The notes beneath the pieces are model-generated. The model did not search any database, was not told where the DNA came from, and saw only the letters and a program-made list of their open reading frames with translations. The translations under genes were made by a program, and so were the position numbers. Source: Mizuhopecten yessoensis (Eukaryota). Taken from it: a DNA stretch of 48,217 nucleotides. The stretch lies in contig NW_018404455.1 of NCBI RefSeq assembly GCF_002113885.1, positions 807,309-855,525 on the forward strand. The letters are read 5' to 3'. This document shows positions 2,849 through 39,500 of this stretch, piece after piece (within the stretch, counting starts at the first letter, position 1; every line of letters starts with the position of its first letter).

Positions 2849-3200
2849 TTGAGGTTTCTCTTGTGCAACCAATTTCTATTATGCATACTTAACACAGTCA
2901 TTATAATGCATATTTCAACCCTACTTGGCTCTTTACATACGTAAAATAAAGAATCCCCCCCAGGAGAACCACTGAAAACCCCCACCAATCAGACGGCAGT
3001 ATTCACGCACGTGAACAGACCCGAAGCCATGCTTCCCACTTCATAATTCCAAAGCCCAATAAGCTGAGAGCCAAGGAGACAAGGGAAGGATGGGATGGAA
3101 CTCACCTAATGACTGTGGTAAGTAATTATAATAGAAATTGGTTTCACAAGAGAAACCTCAATTCTATTTCAAAATACGTTATCACAGCCATTATAATGCG
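2849..3200. repeat. DIRS internal complementary region (ICR ~3111-3200) and right terminal repeat/extension (~2849-2915)
   Basis: ttgaggtttctcttgtgcaaccaatttctattat (2849-2882) is the reverse complement, with 2 mismatches, of ataatagaaattggtttcacaagagaaacctcaa (3128-3161). cacagtcattataatgc (2893) recurs as cacagccattataatgc (3183). Confidence 0.8.
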
Positions 3201-4045
3201 AATTCCATGGAGCGATGAAGGGTTCCAACATTAGGACCCATACCCCAAGAGGAAAAATGCAAAATATCTTTTCTTTTGAGATACAGAGCCTGATTACGAC
3301 CAGCGTTCCGGATCACGCGGTAGAAGACATAATGAGGCTCATGCAAAAAAGAGGGAGGACAGACAACGGACTGGGCAGCCACAAGAGGGCCCAAAGAATA
3401 CAACCTGTCAGACTGTCCCGACAAAGATCTTAGAATTCCCCCTCCAAAAACAGCAGCTGTCATGACTTCAGCGTAAGAAGGACCATTAAATAAGGCCCAC
3501 GAAGTAACTAAAGCGCGAACCTCATGAGTCCTTACCCCTGACACCCGCAAGGACTGATCCCCTGCCGACTCATACGCAGCTCGAACAGTCTGAACACTCC
3601 AGCGCGAGATGGTCGCCGCAGAGATATCGGAGCGACCGGGCTGGAGAGACTGCAACAGCCGAGACGAGTGCTAAATTCCACCTAGGGACCAATTGCCTTG
3701 AACGAGGCTTCTCAATATAGAAGCCCCTAATGAGAGCAGACAATGAAGCGTCCGAACCCACAGACTTGCTACCATAGAAAGCCAGCACACTAGCAATGGC
3801 TGAACGATAGCCCGCAATAGTTCCCGGAGACAGGCCTTTGTCCTGGAACAGAAACAAAAGAAAGTCTGCTACAACGGGAACAGAGGCAGAGACTGGATCA
3901 ATTGACCATCCGACACACCAATCACCGAAGGCGGACCATCGAGATTGGTAGACGGCGAAAGACGAAGTTCTCAGTGATCCTACGATGCGAGTTGCAACTT
4001 CTCGAGAAAAGCCCGTCTGAGTAAGCCATCCCGATATAGCATTTA
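3191..4045 (-). pseudogene. DIRS tyrosine recombinase, frameshifted and internally deleted
   Basis: YQSRWSAFGDWC...VADFLLFLF...TIAGYRSAI...PRWNL joined directly to ATISRW...RTHEVRA...SWA; the segment expected to carry the first catalytic Arg is absent. Confidence 0.85.
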
Positions 4046-4049
4046 ACCG

Positions 4050-5702
4050 TGAAGGTGGAACCGTTCTGGTCCCGAGTGGAACTGCCGGGACCTCGGTTGA
4101 GACAGCACATCCCACAGGGGTGGGATGCTGCGTGGGAAGTCCACCGAAAGCCGAAGCAACAGGAAACCAAGGTTGTCGAGGCCAGAGCGGTGCAACCAGC
4201 GACACAGTAAAAGGGTGTGGAAGAAACTTCTCTAACAACCTGCCCACCAGATTGAAGGGAGGAAACGCATACCCGATCAGTCCTGGGATAGAGCATCCAC
4301 CGCCATGGCCATAGGATCTAGAACTGGAGACACAAACGTAGGGAGTCGAAAGTTCAGGGCCATGGCGAACAGATCCACATGGGGTCTGTCCCAAACCAGG
4401 CAAAGAGACCGAGACAGAGTATCGGCCAGAACATTCAGACGACCTGGAAGATGCCTCACCGTGAGATCGAGACTGATCCCCTGACACAGCAACAGGACCT
4501 GGGTGGATAAAGCACACAGAGCCGGGGAACGGGTGCCCCCTGGCGCGGTGGAGTTGTCTCAGACAAATGGCCTTGCCTTGCAGGGAGGGTCGAAGGCCCC
4601 GAAGGGCCTACAGAACAGCCCGCATCTCTAGAAAATTGATGTGTTCTGAAAGCTTCTCCACCGACCACACCCCTGCCGACGTCTGACCGCAAAGGTATGC
4701 ACCCCAACCGGTCATGGACGCGTCGGTGTAAAAGGGTCATAGAAGAAGATGCCTGTGCCAGAGAAACTCCTGCCAAGACATTGCTCTCGAGAGTCCACCA
4801 CGGAGCTGATTCCTTCACCGACTCCGGCAATGGAAGTACACATCGCACTGCTGAGACGCCGGAGACCAAACTGACAGAAGGAACAGTTAGAGCGGACGGA
4901 TGTGAAGCCGACACAAGGGAACCACATCCGCCAGTGAATTCAGGTAACCGAGGAACCGAAGGAACCATCGAACCTGAATCCGCTCCACACCGACCAGAAC
5001 GGAGACCAACAGAGAAGCCTTCTCGAACTTGGACGCTGGCGGAAGGACCAATCCCAGATCGGTTCTGAACCGATAACTGAGGAAAACAAAAACCTGGGAG
5101 GGGAAAACCTCAGACTTCTCCCTAGAAGGAATGAACCCTAGGCGGCACATAACGCCAAGAACCGACCTGAAAGTAAGCATCGATGGACGTATCCAACATC
5201 CCCGGACGCACTGACGCATTGATGTGTCGTGGCGTTTTCATCTGGAAGTGCAGAGAATCGACGCACGTGTTGAACGTACTGAGGTCGATAATAGGCCTCC
5301 AGGCATCGGACTTCTTCTTCACGAGGAAGACACGGGAATAAAACCCTAGAGAATACCATCCGGTGAAAGTTCCTCGATCGCGCCCTTCGCAATTCTGACC
5401 TGAACCTCCGAACTGAGAGCCTCCACCTTTCCCGGATCGAAATGAGAAAGGGAAAAGATAGGCTCTCGCGCCAGAGGTGGATATTGAAGATACGGGATGC
5501 AGAGACCCGTGGACACAACCCCTAGGACCCAACTGTCTGGTGTGATTTCCTTCCACTGAGGAACGAAATGGGACAGCCGACCGCCGACTGGCAAGTCCGG
5601 AAGGGGCCAATCTAGCCATTTCAAAACCACATCGGCGAAGCCTTCTGCGCACATGGGCGTGGGAGCGGCGACAGACAGTAGACAAGGAGTTACCAAGGGC
5701 AA
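4050..5702 (-). pseudogene. DIRS RT-RNaseH-DNA adenine methyltransferase ORF, fragmented
   Basis: PVGGRLSHF..W, WRPIIDL, DAYF, then a jump to LGF..SREKS (YLDD region missing); RNase H and DLFA/FPPF methylase motifs lie in shifted frames. Confidence 0.85.
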
Positions 5703-9107: not shown

Positions 9108-9601
9108 GTACCTGTCCATTTGTTTTCTTTTAAGATATAAGAAAATCACAATGAACTTTTCAACACCTGGGATATTTTTACAAATCCTGAAGTTACGTCA
9201 ATAACCGAAATACTTTCTACCGACATAAAGTTGAAAACCACGCACGGGAAAATAGAAAATATCCCGAGAGAATAGTTATTAAGTGTACAGTCCAAAATAG
9301 CATAAACAATGAGGTGTGCCGGTATGGTAGCATTCACAAGCCTTAAAGTTCAATTGATATAAAACATGCATGGATACGGTTGTTTAGTATGCCGCTAGGT
9401 ATTCTCGATAGATGGTATCTAGTGATATTTGACACAAACATATTTGATAATACACAGAACGGCAGTAGGTTTCTACAAAAACAAAAGATATTTTAAATGT
9501 ATTACCTGTTCATTTGTTTTCTTTTAATCTATAAGTAAATCTCAGTGAACTTGTTAACCCCTGGGATATTTTTCAAGTTCTGAATTTATGTCAACAACCG
9601 A
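9108..9601 (+). repeat. Imperfect ~100-bp direct repeat upstream of the secreted-protein gene
   Basis: tacctgtccatttgttttcttttaa...cctgggatattttt...gtcaataaccga (9108-9208) vs tacctgttcatttgttttcttttaa...cctgggatattttt...gtcaacaaccga (9503-9601). Confidence 0.75.
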
Positions 9602-9646
9602 TTATATATGATCACAAGTTTAAACTTTGTGAACTGAAAAGGGCAG

Positions 9647-9685
9647 TATAAAAAGGAAGCCCAGCCGCACTTTTTATAGACAGTC
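9647..9685 (+). promoter_or_regulatory. TATA box and Inr-like site
   Basis: TATAAAAAG at 9647-9655; CAGTC ~34 nt after its start (9681); ATG at 9738. Confidence 0.6.
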
Positions 9686-9737
9686 TTTTAGTGTACCACA
9701 TTCACGTACAATCTATTGTTTTCCGTTCAAAAGAAGT

Positions 9738-9833
9738 ATGAAGGGAACAAACCTGCCTCTTGCAGTCCTGCTGTTTACAACATCTGTCCTACTTGCTAAA
9801 GTCAAGTCGTCTGCGATCGGACAGAGGAGTATC
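9738..9833 (+). CDS. Secreted-protein exon 1 (signal peptide)
   Basis: Basic N-terminus, hydrophobic core LPLAVLLFTTSVLLA, donor GTAAGT at 9834, phase 0. Confidence 0.8.
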
Positions 9834-12800
9834 GTAAGTTTGAATCACTTTCCTAACATTTATATTCATTTAATTACATATATATGTACGATATTAATAG
9901 CTTAATCAAATGTCTAACCGATTTTTCACTTAAACGTTACATTAGTATTATATATATTATAGATCTGTTTTACTGACATTTTCATTCCTGTATAATTTTC
10001 ATTTCGTCAAAAAAAAAATTAGATGACAGATTGTTGAAATATTGACATATTTGAACAAACCCTGATCTGAATCATTGAATTAATTTTTGAAATATATGCA
10101 AAATGACAGATTCAAAGAAAAGTATACTAAACATGTGTGAAATTCAAATGCCTTGCTATTCTTTGAACTAAGACTAGTTATTTGCTGTTGATATTTCATT
10201 CTGGTTCATTTTCTAGCGCCGGTGCAAAATTTATCAATTAATCAGAAGTTGAGTAATACACACTATTCAAAATATTTGACTTTTCATGCTCGTTTGTATG
10301 TTGACTATGTGCTATCGTTTGCTGTTTAATTTACAATTAAAACATACAAAAAAAAACTTGTTCTGTTCAACATGTTAGTTCAATTGGATGAACCATGTAT
10401 GCTGATATAATAAACAACACATACATAAAGGGTGGCATATCTACTAATTTAAAGATAAAATATGTTTACAATTGTCAAAAACATATAACGCTAGAACAGT
10501 TCTGGTGTGGATAATCAAACATAAACCCTTAAACATCACGATCCTTAAACAACACGAGCCTTAAACATCACGATCCTTAAACATCACGAGCCTTAAACAT
10601 CACGATCCTTAAACATCACGATCCTTAAACATCACGATAGGCTGTACGACTAATCCTGTCAACATACTTATCTAAACCCTTAAACATCACAATAGGCTGT
10701 ACGACTATTCCTGTCAACATACTTATCTAAACCCTTAAACATCACGATCCTTAAACATCACGATAGGCTGTACGACTAATCCTGTCAACATACTTATCTA
10801 AACCCTTAAACATCACGATCCTTAAACATCACGATAGGCTGTACGACTATTCCTGTCAACATACTTATCTAAACCCTTAAACATCACGATCCTTAAACAT
10901 CACGATAGGCTGTACGACTAATCCTGTCAACATACTTATCTAAACCCTTAAACATCACGATCCTTAAACATCACGATAGGCTGTACGACTAATCCTGTCA
11001 ACATACTTATCTAAACCCTTAAACATCACGATCCTTAAACATCACGATAGGCTGTACGACTAATCCTGTCAACATACTTATCTAAACCCTTAAACATCAC
11101 GATCCTTAAACATCACGATAGGCTGTACGACTAATCCTGTCAACATACTTATCTAAACCCTTAAACATCACGATCCTTAAACATCACGATAGGCTGTACG
11201 ACTAATCCTGTCAACATACTTATCTAAACCCTTAAACATCACGATCCTAAAACATCACGATAGGCTGTACGACTAATCCTGTCAACATACTTTTCTAAAC
11301 CCTTAAACATCACGATCCTTAAACATCACGATAGGCTGTACGACTAATCCTGTCAACATACTTATCTAAACCCTTAAACATCACGATCCTTAAACATCAC
11401 AATAGGCTGTACGACTAATCCTGTCAACATACTTATCTAAACCCTAAACATCTCGATCCTAAAACATCACGATAGGCTGTACGACTAATCCTGTCAACAT
11501 ACTTTTCTAAACCCTTAAACATCACAATAGGCTGTACGACTAATCCTGTCAACATACTTATCTAAACCCTAAACATCTCGATCCTAAAACATCACGATAG
11601 GTTGCACGACTAATCTTGTCACCATACATGTACTTATTTAACCCCTTAAACATCACGATAGGCTGGAGGCTAATCCTGTGAACATACTTATCATCTATAG
11701 AGTTTTGTCTTATACAGATGGGCGTTGCCGAATCAAACGTTCATTCATTGATGGGTAAGTATAGCTTTGTATTTAGTTCAATGGCATAGTTATTTTCAAC
11801 ATCTTTGATATTTTAAAGAATGAAACATTGTTCCGTGTAAGATTCTCTTACTACTTTTTAATTTTAACTAATATATTAATGACTTAATTAAAGTGCCATC
11901 AATTTTACTGTAAATCATTGAGTTAAACAAGAACATATTTCATATTGATCTTTAAAAGGATCGAACGGAAATTCAAGTATACAGGCAAAATTCAGTGATT
12001 GTTTCGCAATTTATTTAAATATATTGTTGATATCATTGATAACTTACTGTTTTATAAAGGTAATGATGGGTTTTTCCAAGATTTCTTGTATACTTATTGG
12101 ACTTTGTGATTGATCGAGGTAAACAAATATTCTTGTTTTCCTTACACACGGCCGGTAACTATTTATAATTTCATAAGTCTCAAGAAATATTTGGGTCAGG
12201 ATTTTTATGCTTAACAGAAAAGTCATAAATCTGATACAATGATTGGAAAATGCATGCGATATGCTAGATAGCCTGTTACAGACATGGTCACAATGGCCAA
12301 CACAATGATATCATGTAAGGCCACACCAAAAAAGTACAAGAGATGAAATGAGAGGAAACGCGTCATCTCATTTAAAGTTTGATTCCTCTGTCATATCTTC
12401 ATTCTATAAAGGAAACAAAATACTGCTCTGGTTTAAGTTTGTGTTAAATTTACGTCTTTGTTGATGATGAGAACATTTTAGTTGGGATTTATATTGACAA
12501 AAGATGCTGCCTGAAAACTGTTAAAAAACTTAATAATCACAAGAAAGATAAAAATTGTTCATCAAACTTCTATTTCAATATCAGAGATTGGCAACTATAC
12601 TCAAATGATCAAATTCTTAATCTCAATTTGTATTAGTCTTAATTTGTAAAAGTGGTCTCAAGATGTAAGATGTATCACCATTTCAATGATATTCCCAAGT
12701 AAAAGTACCTGCTGACTGTTGTAAAAAAATAATTTAATGGACAAGCAAACTTGAAATTTGGTTTTCAAAAATGTGTGATTATAGCTCTGTTTCTTAATAA

Positions 12801-15800
12801 ATCTTGTTTTTATCAAATAGGTCTATTCCTATACTTTTTTTTCCCCGCCATTATTCCTATTTAGATATGAATGCTATGGGAATTTACCAGACAGAATTAC
12901 AGACATCAACATACATGATAGTACATATATGTATATCCTCTTTGTAATGTGTATTTTCAGCGAACAGCAGGAATCGCAGATCTGACGAAAGTGATTCAGG
13001 CAGCTCCTCGGGTAGAGTATTATTTTTTATTATTTTATATATATTATAAGTCATAAATAACTTGTTACGTTTGCTTTATTAACGTTAGTGAGAAGGCAAG
13101 CAAACATTCGCATTTACCAACAAATTGCATACTAACAATAAATTCCAGATAGGAATTTGAATTGGAATCACCAAGGAAATTTTAAATTATTAGGTATCTC
13201 TTATAACTTTCAATTGGAAAATATTTTGGAAGATAATTTCAGACAAAAGTTAGTCACTGTCAAAAAGCTACTAAATGATTGGTCATTTAGAAACCTTACA
13301 TATATTGGCAAAGTAACTGTTATAAAAACTTTAGCTCTGCCCATTTTTATTCAAACATTTACTGTCTTACCAGACCCACCCTTAGAAATGGTCAAAGAGC
13401 TACAGAAATATTTCTTTGAATTTTTATGGAACGAAAAGGTAGACAAAGTAAAACGTACAGTTATGTATGGGGATTATAATGAGGGAGGTTTACGTGTACC
13501 ACACATTATATCTTTTTGTCATGCCTTAAAAATGTGCTGGATTAAAAAAATATTGGATCCATTAAATACTTCACCTTGGAAGACACTGATATTAGATAAA
13601 ATTGAACCATATGGGGGAGATAAAGTTTTTAAAATGAAAAAAGAAGGGCTTTTAAAAATTTCCAAATTCTTAAATATCTTTTGGAGAGAAATATTCACTA
13701 TATGGGCAGAGTTAACTGGTGATGAACTCCCCACAACCCCAGACACTGTTGCTTCTGAGCCGATCTGGTATAATAACTTCATTAAAATTGATAATAAGAT
13801 TTTTATTTATAAACATTGGTGTGAAAAGGACATTTTTTTTATTGGGGATCTTGTTGAAAACAATAGTTTTTTAACACATGAATACTTTTGTGAGAAATTC
13901 AATTTGGCTGTTAATTTCATTGAATTTTTGGGAATTTTAAATGCAATACCAAGGTCATGGAAACTAATTTTATTTCAAAGAAATGAACCAATTGAGGCAA
14001 AACAAAGTAAATTTATTCAGTATTTGAAGAAACATGAAAAGGTTACAAACTATTTTTATAAATTTATGCTGAAATCAGTCACAGAAATACCAAAGAAAAG
14101 TCAAGATGCATGGCAGGAAATTTTACATGTAAACATTCCCAAAGAATCCTGGTGTAAGTTTTATTCAATTCCGAGATATATTACAGATGACACTAAACTT
14201 CAGAATTTTCAGTTCAAACTCTTTCATAGAATTCTATATACTAATACCAAATTAATGCAATGTAAATTGAGTGAAACAGAAAGATGCACATTCTGTGGTG
14301 TGGGAAGAGAAACATTAATACATTTATTATGGGAATGTTGTCATGTACAATCTCNTATGTTTAATGTTAAAAAATAAAACAAGTGTTATCTTTGTTAAGC
14401 ATTCTAATTCAACAAACAAAACTTGAATTGTTTGGGTTTTTTTGTAAATAAAATGTGATTATCAATCTTTTTGTTTTTTTGATAAAACTTGTTTTTTTTT
14501 CAAATGTGACTATTTCTATCGTCTTTATCCCGCTATTTTCCTATGTAAATATGATTGTGATGGGAATTTACTAGACAGAGTTACATACATCAACATAAAT
14601 GATGGTATATCCTCTTTGTGATTTGTAAATTCAGAGCAAAGCAGGAAACGCAGATCTGGAGAAAGTGATTCAGGCAGCTCCTCGGGTAAAGTATTATTTT
14701 GTATTATTTTATATATATTATAAGTCATAAATAACTTGTTACATTTGCTTTATTTACGTTAGTGAGAAGGCAAGCAAACATTCGCATTTACCAACAAATT
14801 GCATACTAACAATGAATTCGTTTATTCGGACTTAGTTTTTAAGATTAATATTTCCGTTATATTTTATATTAACCATAAAAAAAGATAGATAAAAAGGCAG
14901 CAAAGTGCATCATTGAGATAATTTGTTTACAGAGTGATTTTATGATATCCAATTTATTGACAATTGTCAATTCATTTTTATCGATAATAGTAATGTGTAA
15001 CAGATGTGATGATGTCTCCTTATATCAACGTATTTGTTATTACATCTGTTGACCCCACCTTTCCTTTAATCCTATTCTTATTCATTATTAAAAGTTGTTT
15101 TTACACAACCAATAAGATTTTCTATGTGATGTTTGGATGACTAGTACGATATGTACACTGTCACCTTCATCAGACAAATGACCAGTGAAGCGTATGCACA
15201 CAAAGGTGTAAAATGCGTTCGAGTTGTCCACAAACATCGATGTCGATTCGGCTACGCTGTAAGCGTATGTACAATAGTTGTTTTATATGTACCATACTTA
15301 CCAACCTGAAGAAAATGTTTAGAAAAAACTGTTCCTATCCTAATTTCAGAAATTGCGTTACAAATGTAATATCATTATTTTTTTATCATGTTTTTTAACA
15401 CAAAATGAATCGATATTTCTACTGGCTTTATTTTTTGTACTTTGAATATTGTTCTATTTTAATAAATATGTTACAATGTTGTATTTAGAGTCAAACGAAA
15501 TCAGTGAGAGCGTCTCTTCTGAAGGTAATTATACCAGCACCTGTTAAGAGTTACTTTTTGTTCAGTATAAGATTAATCTACTTGTTGGATTTGCTATGTT
15601 TAATGTTAAAAAACAGAACAAGTTTTATCTTTGTTAAGCATTCTACTTCAACAAACAAAACTTATATTGTTTTTTTTTGTAAATAAAATGTGATTATCTA
15701 TCACTTGTTTTACGCCACCTTTTACTTAATCCTATTCTGTTCCAAAGTTCAGAAATGCGTTCGAATGTGATTTTATATTTTTATCGTGTTTTTAAAACAA

Positions 15801-17874
15801 TTCGAATAGATATTTTTACTGGCTTTATTTTTGTACTTTAAATATTGTTCTATTTTAATAAATTCCTTACAATGTTGTATTTAGAGTCAAGCTCAACCAG
15901 TGAGAGCGTCTCNATGAACTTTGAATATTGTTCTATTTTAATAAATATGTTACAATGTTGTATTTAGAGTCAAACGAAATCAGTGAGAGTGTCTCTTCTG
16001 AAGGTAATTACACCAGCACCTGTTAAGAGTTACTTTTTTTTCAGTATAAGATTAATCTACTTGTTGGATTTGCTATGTTTAATGTTAAAAAATAAAACAA
16101 GTGTTATCTTTGTTAAGCATTCTACTTCAACAAACAAAACTTACATTGGTTATTTTTGTAAATAAAATGTGATTATCAATCACTTGTTTTACGCCACCTT
16201 TTACTTAATCCTATTCTGTTCCAAAGTTCAGAAATGCGTTCGAATGTGATTTTATATTTTTATCGTGTTTTTAAAACAATTTGAATAGATATTTCTACTG
16301 GCTTTATTTTTGTACTTTAAATATTGTTCTATTTTAATAAATTCATTACAATGTTGTTTTTAGAGTCAAGCACAACCAGTTAGAGCGTCTCTTCTGAAGG
16401 TAATTATACCAGCACCTGTTAAGAGTTACTTTTTGTTTAGTATAAGATTAATCTACTTTTGGATTTGCTATGTTTAATGTTAAAAAATAAAACAAGTGTT
16501 ATCTTTGTTAAGCATTCTAATTCAACAAACAAAACTTGAATTGTTTGGGTTTTTTTGTAAATAAAATGTGGTTATCAATCTTTTTTTTTTAATAACACTT
16601 GGTTTTTTTCAAATGTGACTATTTCTATCGTCTTTATCCCGCTATTTTCCTATGTAAATATGATTGTGATGGGAATTACTAGACAGAGTTACATACATCA
16701 ACATAAATGATGGTATATCCTCTTTGTGATTTGTAAATTCAGAGCAAAGCAGGAAACGCAGATCTGGAGAAAGTGATTCAGGCAGCTCCTCGGGTAAAGT
16801 ATTATTTTGTATTATTTTATATATATTATAAGTCATACATAACTTGTTACATTTGCTTTATTTACGTTATTGAGAAGGCAATCAAACATTCGCATTTACC
16901 GACAAATTCCATACTAACAATAAAATTCTTTATTTGGACTGAGTTTTCAAGATTAATATATCCGTTATATTTTATCTGTACCATTAAAAAAAGATATATA
17001 AAAGGCAGCAAAGTGCATCAGATTACCTGTGTTCAATATCAGATTAATCTACGTGTTTAATGTTGAAGAATTAAATAAGTGTTAACTATTTTAAGCATTC
17101 TGCTTCAACAAATACAATTTTCAGATGGTGCTTTATTTCTTCATATATCGAGTTGTCATATTACGCAAACGGATTGTTAACTCTGATAGTCGACTATCAG
17201 TCCCCGAGGTTGGCCATAGCCTTGTAGCTGATATTTAGTTTGGCAGGATTTACTTAAAATGCTAGCTTAGTGACAAATGAACGGTTTTTTAAAGATTAAT
17301 CCATAATTGCCGATATGGCTAAATGGTGGAGTAAAAATGCTTCTTTGTTAGACTTTCTGCACTTCCCAGATTCATTTTTTCGTATTCCTTATGGTTATAA
17401 CAGTTAAGAACGTTTTTGAAAGCAAGCAAGCATGATTATATGACAATTTTTTAAACATGATACTGAGGATAACAAAACGATATGATCCAATTGGCTACAG
17501 AAAAAAGCCAGGGTAATTCGCCCATGCTTTTCAAATGTTTGATAATTAACTTAGAAAATACCCAATACAAAAACTCCATTGACGTCGATAAATTCATATT
17601 GGGTAAATTTTAGAAACTTGTAAAGGATGTTATCATTTTAACCTTATTAGTTTGATTTTTATCAATGTTTTTGTTTTACTTTATCCGGATTTACATGCAC
17701 TACACTTCCCCCTTAATTTTGGAATTAATAAAAAAAAATGACGCATGTTATAACATTTACCAGTCAGTTATGTGGACCAGAACATCCATAATTGTTTAAC
17801 TTTGACATTAACTACTTCAATTTATCCAAATCATCCTATTTTTAGATTCAGCAGAAAGCAGGATATTTGGCTGA
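9738..17874 (+). CDS. Multi-exon gene for a secreted Ser/Glu/Asp-rich, furin-site-containing phosphoprotein precursor (whole CDS span)
   Basis: Phase-compatible GT-AG chain: MKGTNLPLAVLLFTTSVLLAKVKSSAIGQRSI|MGVAESNVHSLM|ANSRNRRSDESDSGSSS|EQSRKRRSGESDSGSSS|ESNEISESVSSE|ESSSTSESVS(SE)|...|EQSRKRRSGESDSGSSS|DSAESRIFG*. True module number is uncertain because of the joins at 14355 and 15913. Confidence 0.7.
10523..11691. repeat. Composite minisatellite: 16-bp monomers grading into 71-bp (and 55-bp) units
   Basis: (ccttaaacatcacgat) x~7, then units of 2x16-mer + aggctgtacgactaatcctgtcaacatacttatctaaac. Confidence 0.95.
11718..11754 (+). CDS. Secreted-protein exon 2 (MGVAESNVHSLM+g)
   Basis: ttttgtcttatacag acceptor, G|GTAAGT donor, 37 nt, phase 0 to 1. 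Confidence 0.7.
12961..13011 (+). CDS. 51-nt module exon (ANSRNRRSDESDSGSSS)
   Basis: tattttcag acceptor, G|GTAGAG donor, phase 1-1; all six Ser codons are used. Confidence 0.7.
13146..14354 (+). mobile_element. 5'-truncated L1/Tx1-clade LINE, ORF2 C-terminal part; 3' end lost at the assembly join
   Basis: ~400 uninterrupted codons: KLLGI...W..RNLTYIGKVTVIKTLALP...EGGL...W..K...FQFKLFHRILYTN..L...CTFC...ETLIHLLWEC (zf-RVT). Confidence 0.9.
14635..14685 (+). CDS. 51-nt module exon (EQSRKRRSGESDSGSSS)
   Basis: Paralogue of 12961-13011 with conserved AG/GT and flanking intron. Confidence 0.7.
15489..15524 (+). CDS. 36-nt module exon (ESNEISESVSSE)
   Basis: ttgtatttag acceptor, AAG|GTAATT donor, phase 1-1. 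Confidence 0.7.
15885..15912 (+). CDS. 36-nt module exon (ESSSTSESVS...), cut by the assembly join at 15913
   Basis: Same acceptor context and homologous sequence. Confidence 0.55.
15968..16003 (+). CDS. 36-nt module exon (ESNEISESVSSE), duplicate or allele of 15489-15524
   Basis: One synonymous AGC->AGT difference; splice sites intact. Confidence 0.55.
16364..16399 (+). pseudogene. 36-nt module exon copy with in-frame TAG
   Basis: ESSTTS* : GAG->TAG at 16381-16383; splice sites intact. Confidence 0.5.
16743..16793 (+). CDS. 51-nt module exon (EQSRKRRSGESDSGSSS)
   Basis: Identical to 14635-14685. Confidence 0.6.
17846..17874 (+). CDS. Probable last coding exon (DSAESRIFG*)
   Basis: cctatttttag acceptor, TGA at 17872-17874, donor G|GTAATG at 17892. 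Confidence 0.55.
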
Positions 17875-18554
17875 TTTGAGCAGCGTAATCGGTAATGCTT
17901 ATTTTATCACCAGTATATAAAATAAATTAACTTGATGTTTTTATGATTTCGTAGTTATGCCTGTTTTGGTTTTGGTTTCAATTTGCTTTATTTAGGGTTA
18001 TGCTCGTAACGTTGATTCTGTCTACCAGTATAACCGGTATACAAGTAGAAACTCAAAGTACGTTAGATCAGCCATGTTAGGCGGATGGTAATAACAGTTT
18101 GGATCACTTTGTACTGTGTACAGCTGTTATAAACAAGCAGTCGTAATAACCAGCTACAAAATGAGAATTGATAAAAACAAAATTACCTCATAAAACTCAT
18201 TTTCAGGAGATAAATGATTCTTTCAAATAACAGAAATTTATGTAATTTTTATATGGTCAGTTGTATACTCAAAACTGAAAAAATGAGTGGACAAAATTAC
18301 CTGACCTCAAACTAATATACGTTTTTATACTGTCTGTACAAGTTAGTGCTTCATATTTAATATAGTAAAGGCTACATCAGAATAAAGGCACAAACAAAGA
18401 AATGTCGCGTTAGGTTGACCATGAATCGTCAACCGGTGTTAGGTGACATAAACTGCCGGTGTATCTACAAATAAATGGCTAATTTATCGGGAACGATCAT
18501 ATTAGATCAAATTAAATGTAATATAATTGAAATAAAGACAGAACTTTGAGACTN

Positions 18555-20247: not shown

Positions 20248-23011
20248 TATTTATTAAAATCATTTCAATACTGTCATTTTTATATGTGTTTTGTAAGAAT
20301 TATGATATATGGGATAACCGGTTACATTTAGACTGTTTACGTGCTTTATAAAATATCGGGTGCATTTGGTTGGTTTATGTATTTGAGTTATAATTTTGGC
20401 AAAATAGGGTACAGCAGGCCGAGATAACATTTTATGTCACTTTGATATGGGATATCCAGATGAACGGAGACAATTTATGCATTTATGTGAGGTCATGTGG
20501 TGGATATGTGGGCGATTCATTGACTAAAAGGAATTGCCCATATATTGATATTACACCTCTTCAAAGCTGTAAATGTTATAAGACGAAATGAAACACTTTT
20601 CTCGCCGCTACCATGACATCCGACCGTAGGTGCGATTGCTATTGTACAGGTCAAAACGAAAGTTGGTTTTAAAACACTGACGGTTTTGTAGTGTTTTGGT
20701 AAAACTGTATTGAAGGCCGGCATTGATATAACTGTATATTATGATATCAGATTTATCTTATGAAGTATTCACATCCATAGGGAACAACTCAATATGCAGC
20801 AGACATTTATACCATAGGAGATATCCCAAACCCTGCAAACATATCATGACGTCATTAGAATGAGGAAACTATAAAAAATATTTTTTGTAGATGTGCTACG
20901 AAACACTTAACTTCAGATAGAACAGTAAAGTGTTCAGGTCTGTTCAAATATGAGCAACGGACTGAATCTCAACGTTAGATCCGAAGCGTCGCTGATGTAA
21001 ACAGAATTTTTCACTTCAGCTCAACTGAAAAGACACCGACATGCCTTTGTAGGCAGAAACAAGAGCTAATAAAAACTAGATAAATATAAAAGTGAAATAC
21101 TTCATGCTAATGTTGTAGTCATTAAAATCAGGATCGTATTTAAAACTATTTGAGTTCCGTATCAATTATGATTAAAATTTGTTCATCCTCTTCGATTGTT
21201 GGTGACCTGACTATTCTCTCCGGATCTGATTGGTTTTGCTGGAAATTTTTGCGCATGCGTATTACCTTATTTTGAATCTTTAATTTTCCTAAGAACTCAT
21301 GACATTTTTTCCCGTTTCTTTGGATGTCTCCAAGATTCCTAATCGTTTTTCATCTTTTGTATTGGCGCGTTTTTCTTCTTTTTCTTCTTTTTTTTTTTAC
21401 GTGACATTATTCTTATCAAGAAGATAAAGCAAATTGTGTTATCATATTCTAGGAAATTCCTGCTACATAAACGCCAATGGATACTTTTGAAACAGTACGG
21501 CTAAGGTCATTGAATATATATAAAAGAACGCCGGCTAAAGCAAAAAGTGTAACTTCTATTTATGGTTGTCATAGTTATAAACATTATTCAATAATGGCGA
21601 TAAAAGTTTTCACCTGGGACAATTTTTCCTCCCGTATTGCCTAGTTGAGTTGAAGCATCGATAAAAGAACCTGAGTCAATCGCATCCAAGAAATATAAAG
21701 TCACTACAACTGTTGATCAAATAAACGTTTGTAATTGTGATACACTTAAATGCAAGATTACGTCATTGAAACAATAAAAAGTAAAATTATTTCAAATATA
21801 AAATGCAAACAAATAAACTATAATGGTAGTATACTCTTATTACAAAAATAGAGATGAATGTTTAGAAGCTAAAAATAGAACTCAAATTATTCATTTATAT
21901 GTTTGTTTATGTCTTTCCATACATGTAGCAGGTGTTTGCTTTCAAAATATTATATTTGAAATGTGTCGTATTTTTGGTCTCAAATATCGTAATTACTCTT
22001 ATCTATTATCTGTCGGTAGTTTTGACATTAAGAGTCATGTCGCAAATTAAAGGCAGCAATTTAAATTGTTTGTGTACTGTTTAATAACAATACTCTTAGT
22101 AGTTCACGTGTCTCTGGGGATATATCAAGGTCATTAAAGCATGGTGTGTAATAGAAAAGAGAAATATTAAAATTTGATATCCGAGTTCACTCGTAACTCT
22201 TTCGAACAACAATTTATTCAATATTACAGTTTCTATCACTGTACTTTCCTATAAAAAAAAGTGCTACACCATACAATAGAATCAGGTCAATTGTTTAAAT
22301 TCATACTACAGGCAAATTTTGTGGTCGCCATCTTGATCTGTTTCGGAAATTGTTTATTTTCTTTTATTAAATGAAGGTGCATGTCCTTAACTCGTTCACA
22401 ATCTGAATATGTCGTATTACATGGATTTGACCAAGGTTTACATGGCGAGTGTTGCTGATCTATATAAGATGCTTACTCTTTCACAACCTACTTGATTTAC
22501 CTCCTTGTCTTGTGTCTTTGTTACTACTGTGTTCCTCGCCATAAGGACATGACACTACTAGATTTACATGGCGCTTACTTTTTTACAAGCTCACGGGCTT
22601 ATTCTCCTTGTCTTTTTCAGTCTTTGTTGTTTCTTTGTCACTTCCTTATTTCTCGCCATGAGGACGTAACACTACTGGGCGTTGACCTAGATGTACTTTA
22701 CAGAAGTCGTTGATGAACAGAAGATACTCACCCTTCCGGAACAACTGAACTTAATCTCCTTGTAATTTTGCAAGGCCCTACGTGTGAATAGTCCCTCTGC
22801 TCACATTTTGCCCTGATTTTACGGGTTTACGTGTAAATAGTCTGTTTGCTCACATCTTGCCCTGGTTTTACGAGTTTTCGGTTCGACTTAAAGTTTAATT
22901 GAAACTTCGGTATAAACTTGTTGTTTTTGCACTAGTTTTATCGATTTTTAATTTAAATTACGCTTGTGTTAACACACCGTTAGAGACATGTACCATTACT
23001 GATAAAGACGC

Positions 23012-23783
23012 AGGGCTTCGCTTGTTGTTTTACTGTTAGAGAATCGGGGCTTCTCTTGTTGTTTTACTGTTAGAGAATCGGGGCTTCTCTTGTTATTTTA
23101 CTGTTAGAGAATCGGGGCTTCTCTTGTTGTTTAAAGAATCGGGGCTTCTCTTGTTGTTTAACTGTTAGAGACTCAGGACTTCTCTTGTTGTTTTACTGTT
23201 AGAGACTCAGGGGCTCTCTTGTTATTTTACTGTTAGAGACTCAGGGCTTCTCTTGTTGTTTAACTGTTGGAGACTCAGGACTTCTCTTGTTGTTTTACTG
23301 CTAGAGACTCATGGGTTCTCTTGTTGTTTTACTGTTAGAGACTCATTGCCTCTCTTGTTGTTTTACTGTTGGAGACTCATTGCCTCTCTTGTTGTTTTAC
23401 TGTTAGAGACTCAGGGCCTCTCTTGTTGTTTTATTGTTAGAGACTTAATGCGTCTATTGTTGTTTTACTGTAAGAGACTCAGGGCTTCTCTTGTTGTGTA
23501 ACTGTTAGAGATTCAGGACTTTTCTTGTTGGTTGACTGTTAGAGACTCATGGCTTCTCTTGTTGTTTTACTGTTAAAGACTCAGGACTTCTCTTGTTGTT
23601 TTACTGTTAGAGACTCAAGACTTCTTTTATTGTTTTACTGTTAGAGACTCATGGCTTCTCTTGTTGTTTACCTGTTAGAGACTCATGGCTTCTCTTGTTG
23701 TTTAACTGTTAGAGACTCAGGGCTTCTCTTATTGTTTTACTGTTAGAGGCTCAGGACTTATCTTGTTGTTTTTACTGTTAGAG
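23012..23783. repeat. 34-bp minisatellite x~22
   Basis: gggcttctcttgttgttttactgttagagactca. Confidence 0.95.
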
Positions 23784-30267: not shown

Positions 30268-30456
30268 ATGTGTCATGAAAATCGTCATAGTTCCCTCTGA
30301 TGAAAGAGTAACTAAGTGTAAGTTGTATCAGAGATCACCACAGTTCTCTCTAGCTTGAGTGTGTCAGATATAATGTGTTATGGAAATCGTCATATTTCCC
30401 TCTTACTGGAGTATAGCCACAACTGTAGTAATGTTTTCTACTCAAGCGAGATTTTA

Positions 30457-31504
30457 CAGTTCCCTTCTGCCTAGAGTTAAGATGGCATGATGGTATACTG
30501 GAGCCAGATCGTGACAGTTCCCTTCTGCCTAGAATGTAGATGGCATGATGGTATACTGGAGCCAGATCGACACATTTCCCTTCTGCCTAGAGTGTAGATG
30601 GCATGATGATATACTGGAGCCAGATCGACACAGTTCCCTGCTGCCTAGAGTGAAGATGGCATGATGGTATACTGGAGCCAGATCGCCACAGTTCCCTTCT
30701 GCCTAGAGTGTAGATGGCATGATGGTATACTGGAGCCAGATCGTCACTGTTCCCTTCTGCCTAGAGTGAAGATGGCATGATGATATACTGGAGCCAGATC
30801 GACACAGTTCCCTTCTGCCTAGAGTGAAGATGGCACGATGGTATACTGGAGCCAGATCGTCACAGTTCCCTTCTACCTAGAGTGTAGATGGCATGATGGT
30901 ATACTGGAGCCAGATCTTCACAGTTCCCTTCTGCCTAGAGTGAAGATGGCATGATGGTATACTGGAGCCAGATCGTCACGGTTCCCTTCTGCCTAGAGTG
31001 TAGATGGCATGATGGTATACTGGAGCCAGATCTTCACAGTTCCCTTCTGCCTAGAGTGAAGATGGCATGATGATATACTGGAGCCAGATCGACACAGTTC
31101 CCTGCTGCCTAGAGTGAAGATGGCATGATGGTATACTGGAGCCAAATCGCCACAGTTCCCTTCTGCCTAGAGTGTAGATGGCATGATGATATACTCGAGC
31201 CAGATCGTCACAGTTCCCTTCTGCCCAGAGTGAAGATGGCATGATGTTATACTGGAGCCAGATCGTCACAGTTCCCTTCTGCCTAGAGTTTAGATGGCAT
31301 GATGGTATACTGGAGCCAGATCGTCACTGTTCCCTTCTGCCTAGAGTGAAGATGGCATGATGGTATACTGGAGCCAGATCTTCACAGTTCCCTTCTGCCT
31401 AGAGTGAAGATGCATGATGATATACTGGAGCCAGATCGACACAGTTCCCTTCTGCCTAGAGTGAAGATGGCATGATGGTATACTGGAGCCAGATCGTCAC
31501 AGTT
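30457..31504. repeat. 58-bp minisatellite x~18 with degenerate flanking copies (29465-29776, 30280-30456, 31505-31680)
   Basis: cagttcccttctgcctagagtgaagatggcatgatggtatactggagccagatcgtca. Confidence 0.95.
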
Positions 31505-36500: not shown

Positions 36501-39500
36501 GAATAGATTTTGCGATATGTGATTGCTCGAAATGTGTAGATACAAAGCAGAGTACTGTATTATTTTAGAAACCTAGTGTTCGTTGTTCTGATAAAACATG
36601 AATGATTCCCGTATGTTTTCTGAGTTCCCGACGGTTTAAATATGTAAACAAGATATCATCGTGAGTAGTCAAAGCTTTGTAATAATTGAAGAAAAATAAG
36701 TAGAATTTGACCTGTTAACTCGGCATTGAATTGTGTAAAAAATATTATGGTTACTTAGTTGTTGGTATCTGTTCTAATATATTCCTCAATATCACGTCCC
36801 CGCTCCTTGTGATAATGCATCTCCTTAAGATTGTCAATTACTTGTAAGAATAAATATCCCCATGCAAAGTCAGAGATGTTATAATATATTTACCTGATTG
36901 GTCAGTCTGTTGACCATCTTGTGATTAGTCAGACATATTATATCTAGCTGATTGGTCAGTCTGTCGACCATCTTAGGATTAGTCAGAAATATTAGATCTA
37001 CCTGATTATTCAGTCTGTCAACCATCTTGGGATTAGTCAGAAATATAACATCTACCTGATTAGTAAGTCTGTTGACCATCTTGTAATTAGTTAGAAATAT
37101 TATATCTACCTGATTGGTCAGTGTGTTGACCATCTTGTGATTAGTCAAACATAGTATATCTACCTGATTAGTAAGTCTGTTGACCATCTTATAATTAGTC
37201 AGAAATATTATATTTACCTGTTTGGTCAGTCTGTTGACCAGCTTGGGATTAGTCAGCAATATTACATCTACCTGATTATTCAGTCTGTCAACCATCTTGT
37301 AATTAGTCAGAAATATTATATCTACATGATTGGTCAGTCTGTCAACCATCTTGTAATTGGTCAGAAATATTATATTTACCTGTTTGGTCAGTCTGTTGAC
37401 CAGCTTGGGATTAGTCAGAAATATTATATCTACCTGATTGGTCAGTCTGTCAACCATCTTGGGATTAGTCAGAAATATTACATCTACCTGATTATTCAGT
37501 CGGTCGACCATCTTGTAACTAGTCAGAAATTGTATATTTACCTGATTAGTAAGTCTGTTGACCATCTTGTAATTAGTCAGAAATATTATATCTAGCTGAT
37601 TGGTCAGTCTGTCGACCATCTTGGGATTAGTCAGAAATATTATATCTACCTGATTGGTCAGTCTGGCGACCATCTTGGGATAAGTCAGAAATATTATATC
37701 TACCTGATTGGTCAGTCTGGCGACCATCTTGGGAGCCTTCTGTAGGTGTTGTTTGAAGAGTCGGCGGCTGATTCGGACACAATCAGCTCCATTACTAACT
37801 ACTATCAAACTAGGCTGAGGCTGGTCTTCGAACACGATGTATTGTAGACCCTGCGAGTGGACATCAGTTTAATGACATTACCAAACAACAGTTAGAAGAA
37901 AAGCAACAATAGATAGATCAATGTGGTTTGAAGACAAATATCAGTTTTATGTAAAAAGGTCAACTTTCAGTACCGTCTTAGCCCTGATATTGTCAGAATT
38001 TTGTGGACAATGAAACGTCCTTGACCTTATTTTGGAAACCTACGGCGTCCAATACAAAATTATCAAATAATGAAAACATAAACTATACAGTTTATATGTC
38101 TATAATCTCATCTTATCGTTACTTTAAACACAGGTTATACATTTTGCTAATACAGACATATATTATTAGGCAAGTCACTGCTGACAGTACAGTGTTAGTA
38201 TTGGTAGGTCTGTATCATTATGTCGGATTGCCTGTGGGTCTGTTTTTGTTATTCTGTTTTCATTTAATAATTTATGCATATAATTAACATGTTTGGGGAT
38301 GCACAAGTGTTCTCTCTATAGATACTCTACTCATGATGTCTATCATCAGTCCAGCGTGACAAGTGCAAGCTAGAACAAGTGATGATTTAATTCTATTGTA
38401 AATATTGTAAATATCCTCACTCAAAAGAATGGCAGCCCATTGGATTATTCCACAATCAAATATGAAAATTAAATATAATATAGTTTATGATGTTTCAAGA
38501 GTTTCTATTTCACCTCTTAAATCTTACCTTCACTTATATCTACATGTATCTAATAAAGATATTTTTTATAAATAAATTTCAAATTTTCTTCTAAAACTTT
38601 CTGGTGTTTACATTTTTCTTCGTTACGTGTAATTGTCCGTTACCTGTCAATTGTTGAACACAACAAAGGAGAGGTACGGCCCATTAATGGACAAAGCGAA
38701 TATTTTACTTCATTTTACACTCTAGCATTTATGTACGATGATAACCATCGATGATGATACAATTACAGCTGAATCACCCCAAAATCGTTTGTGTTGTGCA
38801 AGGATCTGAGGACGGTATGAATACTAGGATATAATAGAGAATAAATGATATAAGAAGGAAAGAAAATGCAAGCAGCTGGATTGTATTAAAAACATCGCAT
38901 AAAAGTTTTTTATCATATCTACTGCATTTTTTATTGGTTGTTTGATATTTTTATCAATACTTACAAATACTTCGCCTTTTTTAAGTGTTTGTACCTTGAC
39001 AAACAGAGGGTTTCTATCCGCCTCCGTCTCTTCATGTTCCTGTGTAGGTAAACAAATCAAAAGTGTAACATTTACTGGCGAGTTATATGTATACACAAGT
39101 ATAGACATACGGCTAACATTCTGTTAACAGTCTGGCATTTGAAAACTCGTATCTATTCCTCGAGCTGTCAAACCAATGTTTGTATCGAAGTTATTGTTAC
39201 ACGTATGTGGTTCAAGATTTGAAGCAAAAAGTCTATCAATCAAATTATTTGTGAACGATTTCAGAATCACTTAAGGTGGAAACAACTAAAGTAAGGGCAA
39301 TTCTGCAGGGGGTGAAAATTGCATTTTTTTCAAATCTTCAAAAGTAACTAATATAATGAGTTAAAATATATTTCAGAATCTTTTGATAAGCTGTATTCGA
39401 TAGAAAGAACTATTTTTACCGACATGTGACAGGACTTGCAGAAATTATAAAGAAATAACAAGAAGTTCGGCATAAAACAATCTTATGGTACTGCATTGTT

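What the first reader, a model, noticed from the sequence alone, without database searches (positions are those of the whole stretch)
9738..17891. Hidden mini-exon gene for a secreted, furin-processed, casein/SCPP-like phosphopeptide precursor
Seen: TATA box, a signal-peptide exon, and a phase-consistent chain of tiny exons, none recovered in this frame by the ORF track. They give ...ANSRNRR/SDESDSGSSSEQSRKRR/SGESDSGSSSESNEISESVSSEESSSTSESVSSEEQSRKRR/SGESDSGSSSDSAESRIFG*. Two unrelated exon types are both Ser/Glu/Asp-rich in this frame, and one uses all six Ser codons. Established: R-x-K/R-R is the furin consensus; S-x-E is the Fam20C site; SSEE clusters are the calcium-binding motif of caseins and SCPPs, whose genes also grow by short-exon duplication but with phase-0 introns. 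Here the module introns are phase 1 and SSE|E is formed across junctions, suggesting convergence. Inference: a polyprotein releasing highly phosphorylated acidic peptides for biomineralisation, amorphous-calcium stabilisation or adhesion in an invertebrate.
Basis: partly seen in the sequence, partly recalled or inferred. Interest (0 to 1): 0.85.

Follow-up and report, generated by a model that had tools for sequence, protein, structure and literature searches.

The report
Annotated scallop gene for acidic secreted peptides
The chain of tiny exons is a real gene of the Yesso scallop, already in RefSeq as an uncharacterised protein. It encodes a roughly 100-residue secreted, disordered, serine/glutamate-rich precursor with two furin-type cleavage sites, and its function remains untested.

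Summary
The window has a TATA box (9647), a signal-peptide exon (9738-9833), a 37-nt exon (11718-11754) and phase-1 mini-exons of 51 nt (type A) and 36 nt (type B).

The gene is not hidden. A search with exon 1 alone found XP_021345621.1, "uncharacterized protein LOC110445372 isoform X2" of Mizuhopecten yessoensis (99 aa). Isoform X1 has 111 aa.

- RefSeq has two A modules, not three. There is no A1-to-A2 junction.
- Exon B2 is cut by an assembly gap.
- Exon B4 has an in-frame TAG and is not used.
- Gaps at 14355 and 15913 leave the number of modules open.

A second frame is open in all the mini-exons, but simulation shows this follows from the amino-acid composition.

The protein has about 31% Ser, nine S-x-E sites, the motifs RNRR and RKRR (each followed by S-x-E) and a C-terminal Gly. 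It has no Pfam family, no detectable homologue or paralogue, and a disordered predicted structure. Fam20-type kinase genes are present in the genome.

Three RNA-seq runs of unknown tissue showed no reads on the exons, so expression site and function are untested. The gene is not an SCPP/casein family member. I read it as an orphan member of the known class of acidic secreted phosphoprotein-like precursors.

The parts
9647..9653 (+). TATA box about 90 nt upstream of the start codon
   Evidence: TATAAAA found at 9647. There is no ATG between 9660 and 9738.
9738..9833 (+). Exon E1 coding part: start codon and signal peptide (32 codons), ending in phase 0, donor gtaagt
   Evidence: It is identical to residues 1-32 of P0001 and P0002.
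10520..11692 (.). Minisatellite in intron 1 (71-nt unit made of a 16-nt and a 55-nt sub-unit, about 12 to 16 copies)
   Evidence: Tandem Repeats Finder.
11718..11754 (+). Exon E2, 37 nt, which sets phase 1 for all later exons
   Evidence: Acceptor cag and donor gtaagt. Its peptide sits at residues 33-44 of both RefSeq isoforms.
12961..13011 (+). Module A1 (51 nt, phase 1-1): RNRR site followed by S-D-E and a Ser/Asp/Gly run
   Evidence: residues 46-61 of P0001 and P0002.
13157..14354 (+). Intronic fragment of a non-LTR retrotransposon (3' part of its ORF), cut off by the gap at 14355
   Evidence: A 406-aa ORF with a zf-RVT match, E = 2.8e-4. RNA runs cover it on both strands.
14635..14685 (+). 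Module A2 (51 nt), identical to A3. It is not needed by either RefSeq isoform and lies on a short contig bounded by gaps at 14355 and 15913.
   Evidence: The order of modules in P0002 excludes A2 once B2 is used.
15489..15524 (+). Module B1 (36 nt, phase 1-1), peptide S-N-E-I-S-E-S-V-S-S-E
   Evidence: residues 63-73.
15885..15912 (+). Module B2 (variant B'), truncated by the assembly gap at 15913
   Evidence: Its peptide is found only in isoform X1 (residues 75-82).
15968..16003 (+). Module B3, which encodes the same peptide as B1 (one synonymous difference)
16364..16399 (+). Module B4 (variant B') with an in-frame TAG. It is a pseudo-exon or a null allele and is not used in RefSeq.
16743..16793 (+). 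Module A3 (51 nt): RKRR site followed by S-G-E and a Ser/Asp/Gly run
   Evidence: residues 87-102 of P0002.
17846..17875 (+). Coding part of the last exon, ending in R-I-F-G and the stop codon TGA
17921..17926 (+). AATAAA polyadenylation signal 46 nt after the stop codon, which implies a short 3' UTR
   Evidence: Its use as the polyadenylation signal is inferred.

Best explanation
This is a real, lineage-restricted protein-coding gene of Mizuhopecten yessoensis, already annotated as LOC110445372 (isoforms of 111 and 99 aa). It makes a small mRNA of about 0.45-0.5 kb (estimated from the CDS and the inferred UTRs) from six or seven mostly tiny exons.

Shown by sequence and annotation:
- an N-terminal signal peptide;
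- a 44-residue non-repetitive head;
- an intrinsically disordered tail built from phase-1 modules A (a basic R-x-[K/R]-R motif plus S-x-E and a Ser/Asp/Gly run) and B (Ser/Glu with SSE completed to SSEE by the next exon).

Inferred mechanism:
- The precursor enters the secretory pathway.
- A Fam20-type Golgi kinase phosphorylates the nine S-x-E serines and then neighbouring S-x-pS serines.
- Furin-type convertases cut after RNRR and RKRR. This releases a neutral N-terminal peptide, one 36- to 40-residue polyanionic phosphopeptide and a 19-residue acidic C-terminal peptide ending in Gly.
- The products would act as soluble calcium-binding polyanions, much as casein phosphopeptides or acidic matrix phosphoproteins do.

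The tissue and the actual role (mineral control, adhesion, granule cargo) are not known.
For: - Gene and frame: phmmer with E1 alone found one protein, 100% identical over residues 1-32. It is XP_021345621.1, LOC110445372 isoform X2. All exon peptides map exactly onto both.
- Transcript support (inferred): X1 carries the end of exon B2, which the window lacks because of the gap. So the annotators' model probably rests on transcript sequence.
- Frame statistics favour this frame.
- Motifs: RNRR at 48-51 and RKRR at 89-92, both followed by S-x-E; nine S-x-E sites; 23 S-x-[E/S] sites; 34 Ser in 111 residues; pI 4.06 for residues 52-111.
- Disorder: the Atlas model of this exact protein has pLDDT 0.52 and pTM 0.12. 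There is no Pfam domain.
- Machinery: Fam20 kinase-domain exons above the Pfam cut-off at two or more loci of this genome.
- Literature: Fam20C takes part in shell formation in a pearl oyster (PMC5824888). One third of the phosphosites in a limpet shell fit S-x-E-type motifs (PMC4094399). FGF23 is a precedent for furin cutting just before a Fam20C-phosphorylated Ser (PMC8348777).
Against: - No reads on any exon in three RNA-seq runs of unknown tissue, each read to 19-24%, and only genomic-type contigs in a fourth run.
- Nothing here shows secretion, cleavage or phosphorylation.
- No orthologue or paralogue was found, so there is no conservation evidence. The exons diverge as fast as, or faster than, their introns (Fisher tests not significant).
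- Glu outweighs Asp, unlike Asp-rich mollusc shell proteins.
- Ser-rich secreted stretches can be O-glycosylated instead of phosphorylated.
- The basic motifs could serve as charge-balancing blocks rather than cleavage sites.
Confidence: 0.55

Rival explanations
1. Neuroendocrine reading. The gene encodes a peptide-hormone or granin-like precursor. Convertases in dense-core granules cut at the basic sites. The bioactive product is the N-terminal peptide or the C-terminal peptide, amidated at its final Gly to end in R-I-F-amide. The acidic Ser/Glu stretches are spacers or calcium-binding granule cargo.
For: - The layout is the classic precursor layout: signal peptide, small size, two multibasic sites, and Gly directly before the stop codon.
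- Tissue-restricted expression would fit the empty RNA runs.
- From general knowledge: granins are acidic, phosphorylated by the Golgi casein kinase and cut at basic sites.
Against: - It is absent from the 63 precursors found in the Yesso scallop ganglion transcriptome and peptidome. No match to its head, tail or accession numbers was found in that paper's supplements.
- It has no similarity to any neuropeptide family.
- Most of the precursor would be spacer.
- A terminal Gly alone is weak evidence.
Confidence: 0.2
2. Mucin-like reading. The Ser-rich tail is O-glycosylated rather than phosphorylated, giving a small secreted lubricating or protective glycopeptide.
For: 34 of 111 residues are Ser, in a disordered secreted chain.
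Against: There are almost no Thr or Pro residues. The serines sit in an acidic S-x-E context, which is the Fam20C motif rather than a mucin-type motif.
Confidence: 0.08
3. Young orphan locus with little or no function. It would be a transcribed, recently expanded low-complexity exon array that the annotation pipeline translated but that makes no useful protein.
For: - No homologue anywhere and no paralogue.
- The exons are not more conserved than their introns.
- One module copy has a stop codon (B4).
- No reads in three RNA runs.
Against: - The gene has a coherent design: TATA box, good start context, canonical signal peptide and canonical splice sites on every exon.
- Two unrelated exon types share the same composition in the same phase.
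- All six Ser codons are used.
- Frame statistics.
Confidence: 0.12
4. Frame-switch or dual coding. Skipping the 37-nt exon E2 would read all the modules in another frame, which is open in every copy including B4. The product would be a basic, Ala/Lys/Leu-containing protein from the same exons.
For: - That frame has no stop in any of the ten exon copies.
- The two B2/B4 differences are synonymous in it.
- The last exon resembles module A in it.
Against: - Its openness is expected 60% of the time as a by-product of the Ser/Glu/Asp composition.
- Both RefSeq isoforms include E2.
- The similarity between A and the last exon is a single 9-mer.
Confidence: 0.02

Closest known systems
RefSeq LOC110445372, 'uncharacterized protein' isoforms X1 and X2 (the latter XP_021345621.1), Mizuhopecten yessoensis
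   Same: It is the same gene: same start codon, same frame and same exons E1, E2, A1, B, (B'), A and the last exon.
   Different: RefSeq gives no function, and no paper in the library names the locus or its peptides.
Vertebrate caseins and the SCPP family (casein phosphopeptide clusters S-S-S-E-E)
   Same: Both are secreted and disordered, carry S-x-E and SSEE clusters that are Fam20C targets, and grow by duplication of short symmetric exons. Both are expected to sequester calcium.
   Different: The scallop gene has phase-1 rather than phase-0 introns, is in a mollusc, shows no sequence or Pfam relation, and has multibasic cleavage sites between its modules. The likeness is analogy, not membership.
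Acidic phosphoproteins of foliated-calcite bivalve shells (scallop MSP-1; oyster folian-cv1, cited in PMC9456362)
   Same: Both are secreted, low-complexity, Ser/Gly/acidic modular proteins of pteriomorph bivalves. From memory, MSP-1 also alternates basic and Ser/Gly/acidic blocks.
   Different: Those proteins are large and Asp-dominated. This one has about 100 residues, is Glu-dominated, has furin-type sites, and has no evidence of being in shell or mantle. Sequence similarity was not tested, because no reference sequence was at hand.
FGF23 processing site R-H-T-R|S-A-E (PMC8348777)
   Same: A furin site is followed directly by a serine in an S-x-E motif. Here the sites are RNRR|S-D-E and RKRR|S-G-E. 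In FGF23, Fam20C phosphorylation of that serine controls cleavage.
   Different: The proteins are unrelated. There is no Thr at P2 for competing O-glycosylation. The interplay is purely conjectural here.

Membership tests
SCPP / casein gene family | Introns exclusively of phase 0 between short exons | tested here: not met
   All module introns are phase 1, with split codons G|AG, G|CG and G|AT.
SCPP / casein gene family | Vertebrate gene descended from SPARCL1; sequence or Pfam match to a casein or SCPP | tested here: not met
   The organism is the scallop Mizuhopecten yessoensis. No Pfam family comes near its cut-off.
SCPP / casein gene family | Signal peptide plus S-x-E or SSEE phosphorylation clusters | tested here: met
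   Hydrophobic core L6-A20. Nine S-x-E motifs and two SSEE clusters.
Proprotein-convertase (furin) substrates | R-X-[K/R]-R motif in an accessible luminal segment of a secretory protein | tested here: met
   RNRR at 48-51 and RKRR at 89-92, each with Ser at P1', in a chain modelled as disordered.
Proprotein-convertase (furin) substrates | Actual cleavage at the motif | not testable with these tools
   This needs peptidomics or an in vitro furin digest.
Fam20C (Golgi casein kinase) substrates | S-x-E/pS motifs in a secreted protein, with the kinase present in the organism | tested here: met
   Nine S-x-E and 23 S-x-[E/S] motifs. The PF06702 Fam20C domain is found above its cut-off at two or more loci of this genome. 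Whether these are Fam20C or Fam20B orthologues was not resolved.
Fam20C (Golgi casein kinase) substrates | Phosphoserine demonstrated | not testable with these tools
   This needs phosphoproteomics.
Molluscan neuropeptide precursors | Signal peptide, basic cleavage sites and an amidation Gly | tested here: met
   The C-terminal Gly directly precedes the stop codon.
Molluscan neuropeptide precursors | Membership of a known peptide family, or detection in the ganglion transcriptome or peptidome | tested here: not met
   It is not in the supplements listing the 63 Yesso scallop precursors. No homologues were found.
Acidic shell-matrix phosphoproteins (MSP-1 / folian class) | Asp/Ser/Gly-dominated composition; presence in shell extract; mantle expression | tested here: inconclusive
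   Residues 52-111 are 45% Ser, 18% Glu, 7% Asp and 7% Gly, so the tail is Ser-rich but Glu-dominated. Expression and presence in shell were not tested. Three RNA runs of unknown tissue were empty.

The most novel reading that the evidence does not exclude
A scallop-specific gene has independently built, from phase-1 mini-exons, a casein-phosphopeptide-like polyprotein. In it, every furin site is followed directly by a Fam20-type S-x-E serine (R-x-R-R|S-x-E, as in FGF23). Golgi phosphorylation would then gate the proteolytic release of calcium-sequestering phosphopeptides used in shell or other mineral control. This would be convergent with the vertebrate SCPPs.
Probability: 0.15. Interest if true: 0.6.

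Novelty: new member of a known kind. Interest (0 to 1): 0.35.

Why it matters
If the peptides are made and phosphorylated, this would be a very small, genetically simple invertebrate counterpart of casein phosphopeptides and acidic matrix phosphoproteins. It would be useful for studying three things: how calcium-binding polyanions arise de novo by exon duplication, how phosphorylation and convertase cleavage interact, and how scallops control mineral. At present it is an annotated orphan gene with a plausible but untested biochemical reading. The practical gains of this check are these:
- the frame and exons are validated;
- the gene is identified as LOC110445372;
- the assembly problems that blur the module count are located.

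Tried and rejected
**Alternative frame**
I first suspected that the frame without E2 was the true one. It is open in all the mini-exon copies and the last exon, and several differences between copies are synonymous in it. I rejected this because both RefSeq isoforms include E2. Resampling also shows that the frame's openness is a by-product of composition (60%), whereas the annotated frame's openness (1.3%) and its Ser content (0 of 5000) are not.

**RNA evidence**
- The one run search listed no holder on record as RNA. The one run guessed to be RNA, holding a fifth of the sampled words, gave only an unspliced contig over A2.
- The one read-laying run used window 9640-15639, that contig run and three raw RNA runs of unknown tissue. 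Depth was zero on E1, E2, A1, A2 and B1. Only intronic transposon pieces were covered, and the contig run looks like DNA.
- This gives no verdict on expression.

**Searches that found nothing**
- Exact-product look-ups of P0001 and P0002 in assemblies.
- Paralogue and retrocopy searches in the genome by DNA and by protein: only this locus.
- Pfam.
- Atlas look-alikes: scores of 0.80 or less, uninformative.
- Papers naming the locus, the accession numbers or the peptides.
- The scan's earlier notes, by words.

Only E1 by reference, and then the database proteins that the tools returned, were used as queries.

**Limits of sensitivity**
A 32-residue query and a length-limited word search cannot exclude diverged or much longer orthologues.
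Full report
**What is in the sequence**

The stretch 9500-18100 is AT-rich animal DNA (GC about 0.29-0.35).
- A TATAAAA box lies at 9647. There is no ATG between it and the ATG at 9738, which has A at -3.
- From 9738 a 96-nt coding segment (E1) encodes a typical signal peptide and ends in phase 0 at a gtaagt donor.
- A 37-nt exon (E2, 11718-11754) has a cag acceptor and a gtaagt donor. It sits just after an intronic minisatellite (10520-11692) and moves the phase to 1.
- Then come three 51-nt exons (A1 12961-13011, A2 14635-14685, A3 16743-16793).
- There are four 36-nt exons (B1 15489-15524, B2 15885-15912, B3 15968-16003, B4 16364-16399).
- The final exon runs from 17846, with TGA at 17873-17875 and AATAAA at 17921.
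- All acceptors and donors are canonical, and all modules are phase 1-1. The split codons give Ala, Glu or Asp, so SSE becomes SSEE only across a junction.
- Type A uses all six Ser codons.
- A and B exons are not detectably related at the DNA level (P = 0.36).

**Which frame**

Each module is open in two frames. The second frame would apply if E2 were skipped. Synonymous resampling settled the matter:
- In that case its 48% Ser was never reached in 5000 trials.

**Independent confirmation: the gene is already annotated**

I searched E1 alone, by reference, against 1.84 billion representative proteins.
- That search gave one hit, 100% identical over residues 1-32.
- The hit is XP_021345621.1, [quoted passage not shown], 99 aa.
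- A search with that protein found only itself and isoform X1 of 111 aa.
- The genome size and contig count (987.6 Mb, 82,659 contigs) fit that species' public assembly as I remember it.

Two points suggest that the annotation rests on transcripts. Both are inferences, not shown here.
- From my own knowledge of the NCBI pipeline, alternative isoforms are normally only issued with alignment support.
- X1 contains the end of exon B2, which this assembly lacks because of the gap at 15913.

I did not fill or look up any N.

- Neither isoform has an A1-to-A2 junction.
- B4 has an in-frame TAG and B3/B4 are unused.
- The single Ns at 14355 and 15913 are scaffold joins.
- The short contig between them (14356-15912) looks like a circular permutation of the next contig's B-B'-A unit. 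The stretch 14356-14912 matches 16469-17020 at 96.4%, and 15436-15912 matches 15915-16391 at about 97%.
- This is either a very recent tandem duplication or redundant haplotype assembly, so the true module number is unresolved.
- A1 differs from A2/A3 by 12% in both exon and flanks. B and B' differ more in the exon (14%) than in the flanks (5-7%). The numbers are small and the Fisher tests are not significant.

**Expression**

The one read-laying run covered 9640-15639 with three raw RNA-seq runs of unknown tissue and one contig run.
- Depth was zero on E1, E2, A1, A2 and B1.
- Coverage fell only on an intronic retrotransposon fragment (13157-14354; zf-RVT) and on a repeat at 15040-15440.
- The contig run held A2 unspliced with its flanks, which is the form genomic DNA would give.

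This is no verdict on expression.

**The protein**

P0002 (111 aa) has the following features.
- Composition: 34 Ser. Residues 52-111 are 45% Ser, 18% Glu, 7% Asp and 7% Gly, with pI 4.06.
- Motifs: RNRR at 48-51 and RKRR at 89-92, each followed by Ser in an S-x-E motif; nine S-x-E and 23 S-x-[E/S] motifs; a C-terminal Gly.
- Structure and family: no Pfam family comes near its cut-off. The Atlas model of this exact sequence is disordered (pLDDT 0.52, pTM 0.12).
- Relatives: no homologue outside the species and no paralogue or retrocopy within the genome was found. Sensitivity for so short and biased a protein is low.
- Machinery: Fam20 kinase-domain exons are present at two or more loci.

**Interpretation**

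The best-supported mechanism is a secreted, disordered precursor. A Fam20-type Golgi kinase would phosphorylate it at S-x-E and then at S-x-pS sites. Furin-type convertases would cut after the two multibasic motifs and release polyanionic, calcium-binding phosphopeptides.

The shown steps are the gene, the frame, the motifs, the predicted disorder and the presence of the kinase family. Secretion, cleavage, phosphorylation and any role in mineral or adhesion are inferred.

Supporting context from the literature:
- Fam20C takes part in pearl-oyster shell formation (PMC5824888).
- One third of limpet shell phosphosites fit S-x-E-type motifs (PMC4094399).
- In FGF23, furin cuts immediately before a Fam20C-phosphorylated Ser (PMC8348777). 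That is the same local arrangement as here.

Rivals:
- A neuroendocrine or granin-like precursor. The layout fits, but the gene is absent from the 63 precursors of the scallop ganglion study (PMC5996578).
- A mucin-like glycopeptide.
- A young orphan locus of little function.
- Frame-switch dual coding, which is very unlikely.

**Comparison and novelty**

The gene works like casein phosphopeptides, SCPPs and the acidic shell phosphoproteins. It is not an SCPP: its introns are phase 1, the animal is a mollusc, and there is no sequence relation. Its Glu-rich, 100-residue, furin-punctuated design also differs from the large Asp-rich shell proteins (MSP-1; folian-cv1, cited in PMC9456362).

The gene itself is publicly annotated but uncharacterised. 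No paper in the library names the locus, its accession numbers or its peptides. I therefore rate it a new member of a known kind. The interest is moderate and lies in an untested, easily testable hypothesis.

My alignments agree, but they add that assembly redundancy may mimic part of that expansion.

Noticed in passing
window 10520-11692: Intron 1 holds a compound minisatellite. Its 71-nt unit is made of a 16-nt and a 55-nt sub-unit, with about 12 to 16 copies at 94-97% identity and a strong negative GC skew. It ends 26 nt before exon E2.
   Followed up: partly
window 15040-15440: This intronic repeat is very abundant in all four sequencing runs on both strands. It shows many 'opposite strands' and 'goes back' joints, which suggests a high-copy transposon (MITE- or SINE-like) with inverted structure that is transcribed genome-wide.
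   Followed up: no
window 13157-14354: A 3' fragment of a non-LTR retrotransposon ORF (zf-RVT match) lies in sense orientation inside the A1-A2 intron and is cut off by the scaffold gap. RNA runs show diverged copies being expressed.
   Followed up: partly
window 3190-5700: A GC-rich island (54% against about 33% around it) carries several overlapping long ORFs on the minus strand. The two ORFs tested had no Pfam match. It is probably a degenerate mobile element.
   Followed up: partly
window 36879-37835: A 54-nt tandem repeat of about 16 copies is read through by a 318-aa open frame on the minus strand, giving 18-residue repeats. Only weak, scattered Pfam hits were found. The scan noted this stretch earlier as s1-528101.
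   Followed up: no
window 22996-23783, 30456-31504 and 45428-47118: Three further minisatellite arrays were seen: 34 nt in 23 copies, 58 nt in 18 copies, and 29/58 nt in about 45 copies.
   Followed up: no
window 17846-17891 against 14635-14685: The last exon shares a 9-mer (encoding -S-R-) with module A (P about 0.01 against shuffles). It may be a decayed A module that lost its multibasic site.
   Followed up: partly
G000 C82279:712-5889 and C4422:176010-181225: Two contigs carry identical-scoring Fam20-domain exons. This is probably a redundant (haplotype) duplicate in the assembly, and it fits the redundancy suspected at the locus studied here.
   Followed up: no
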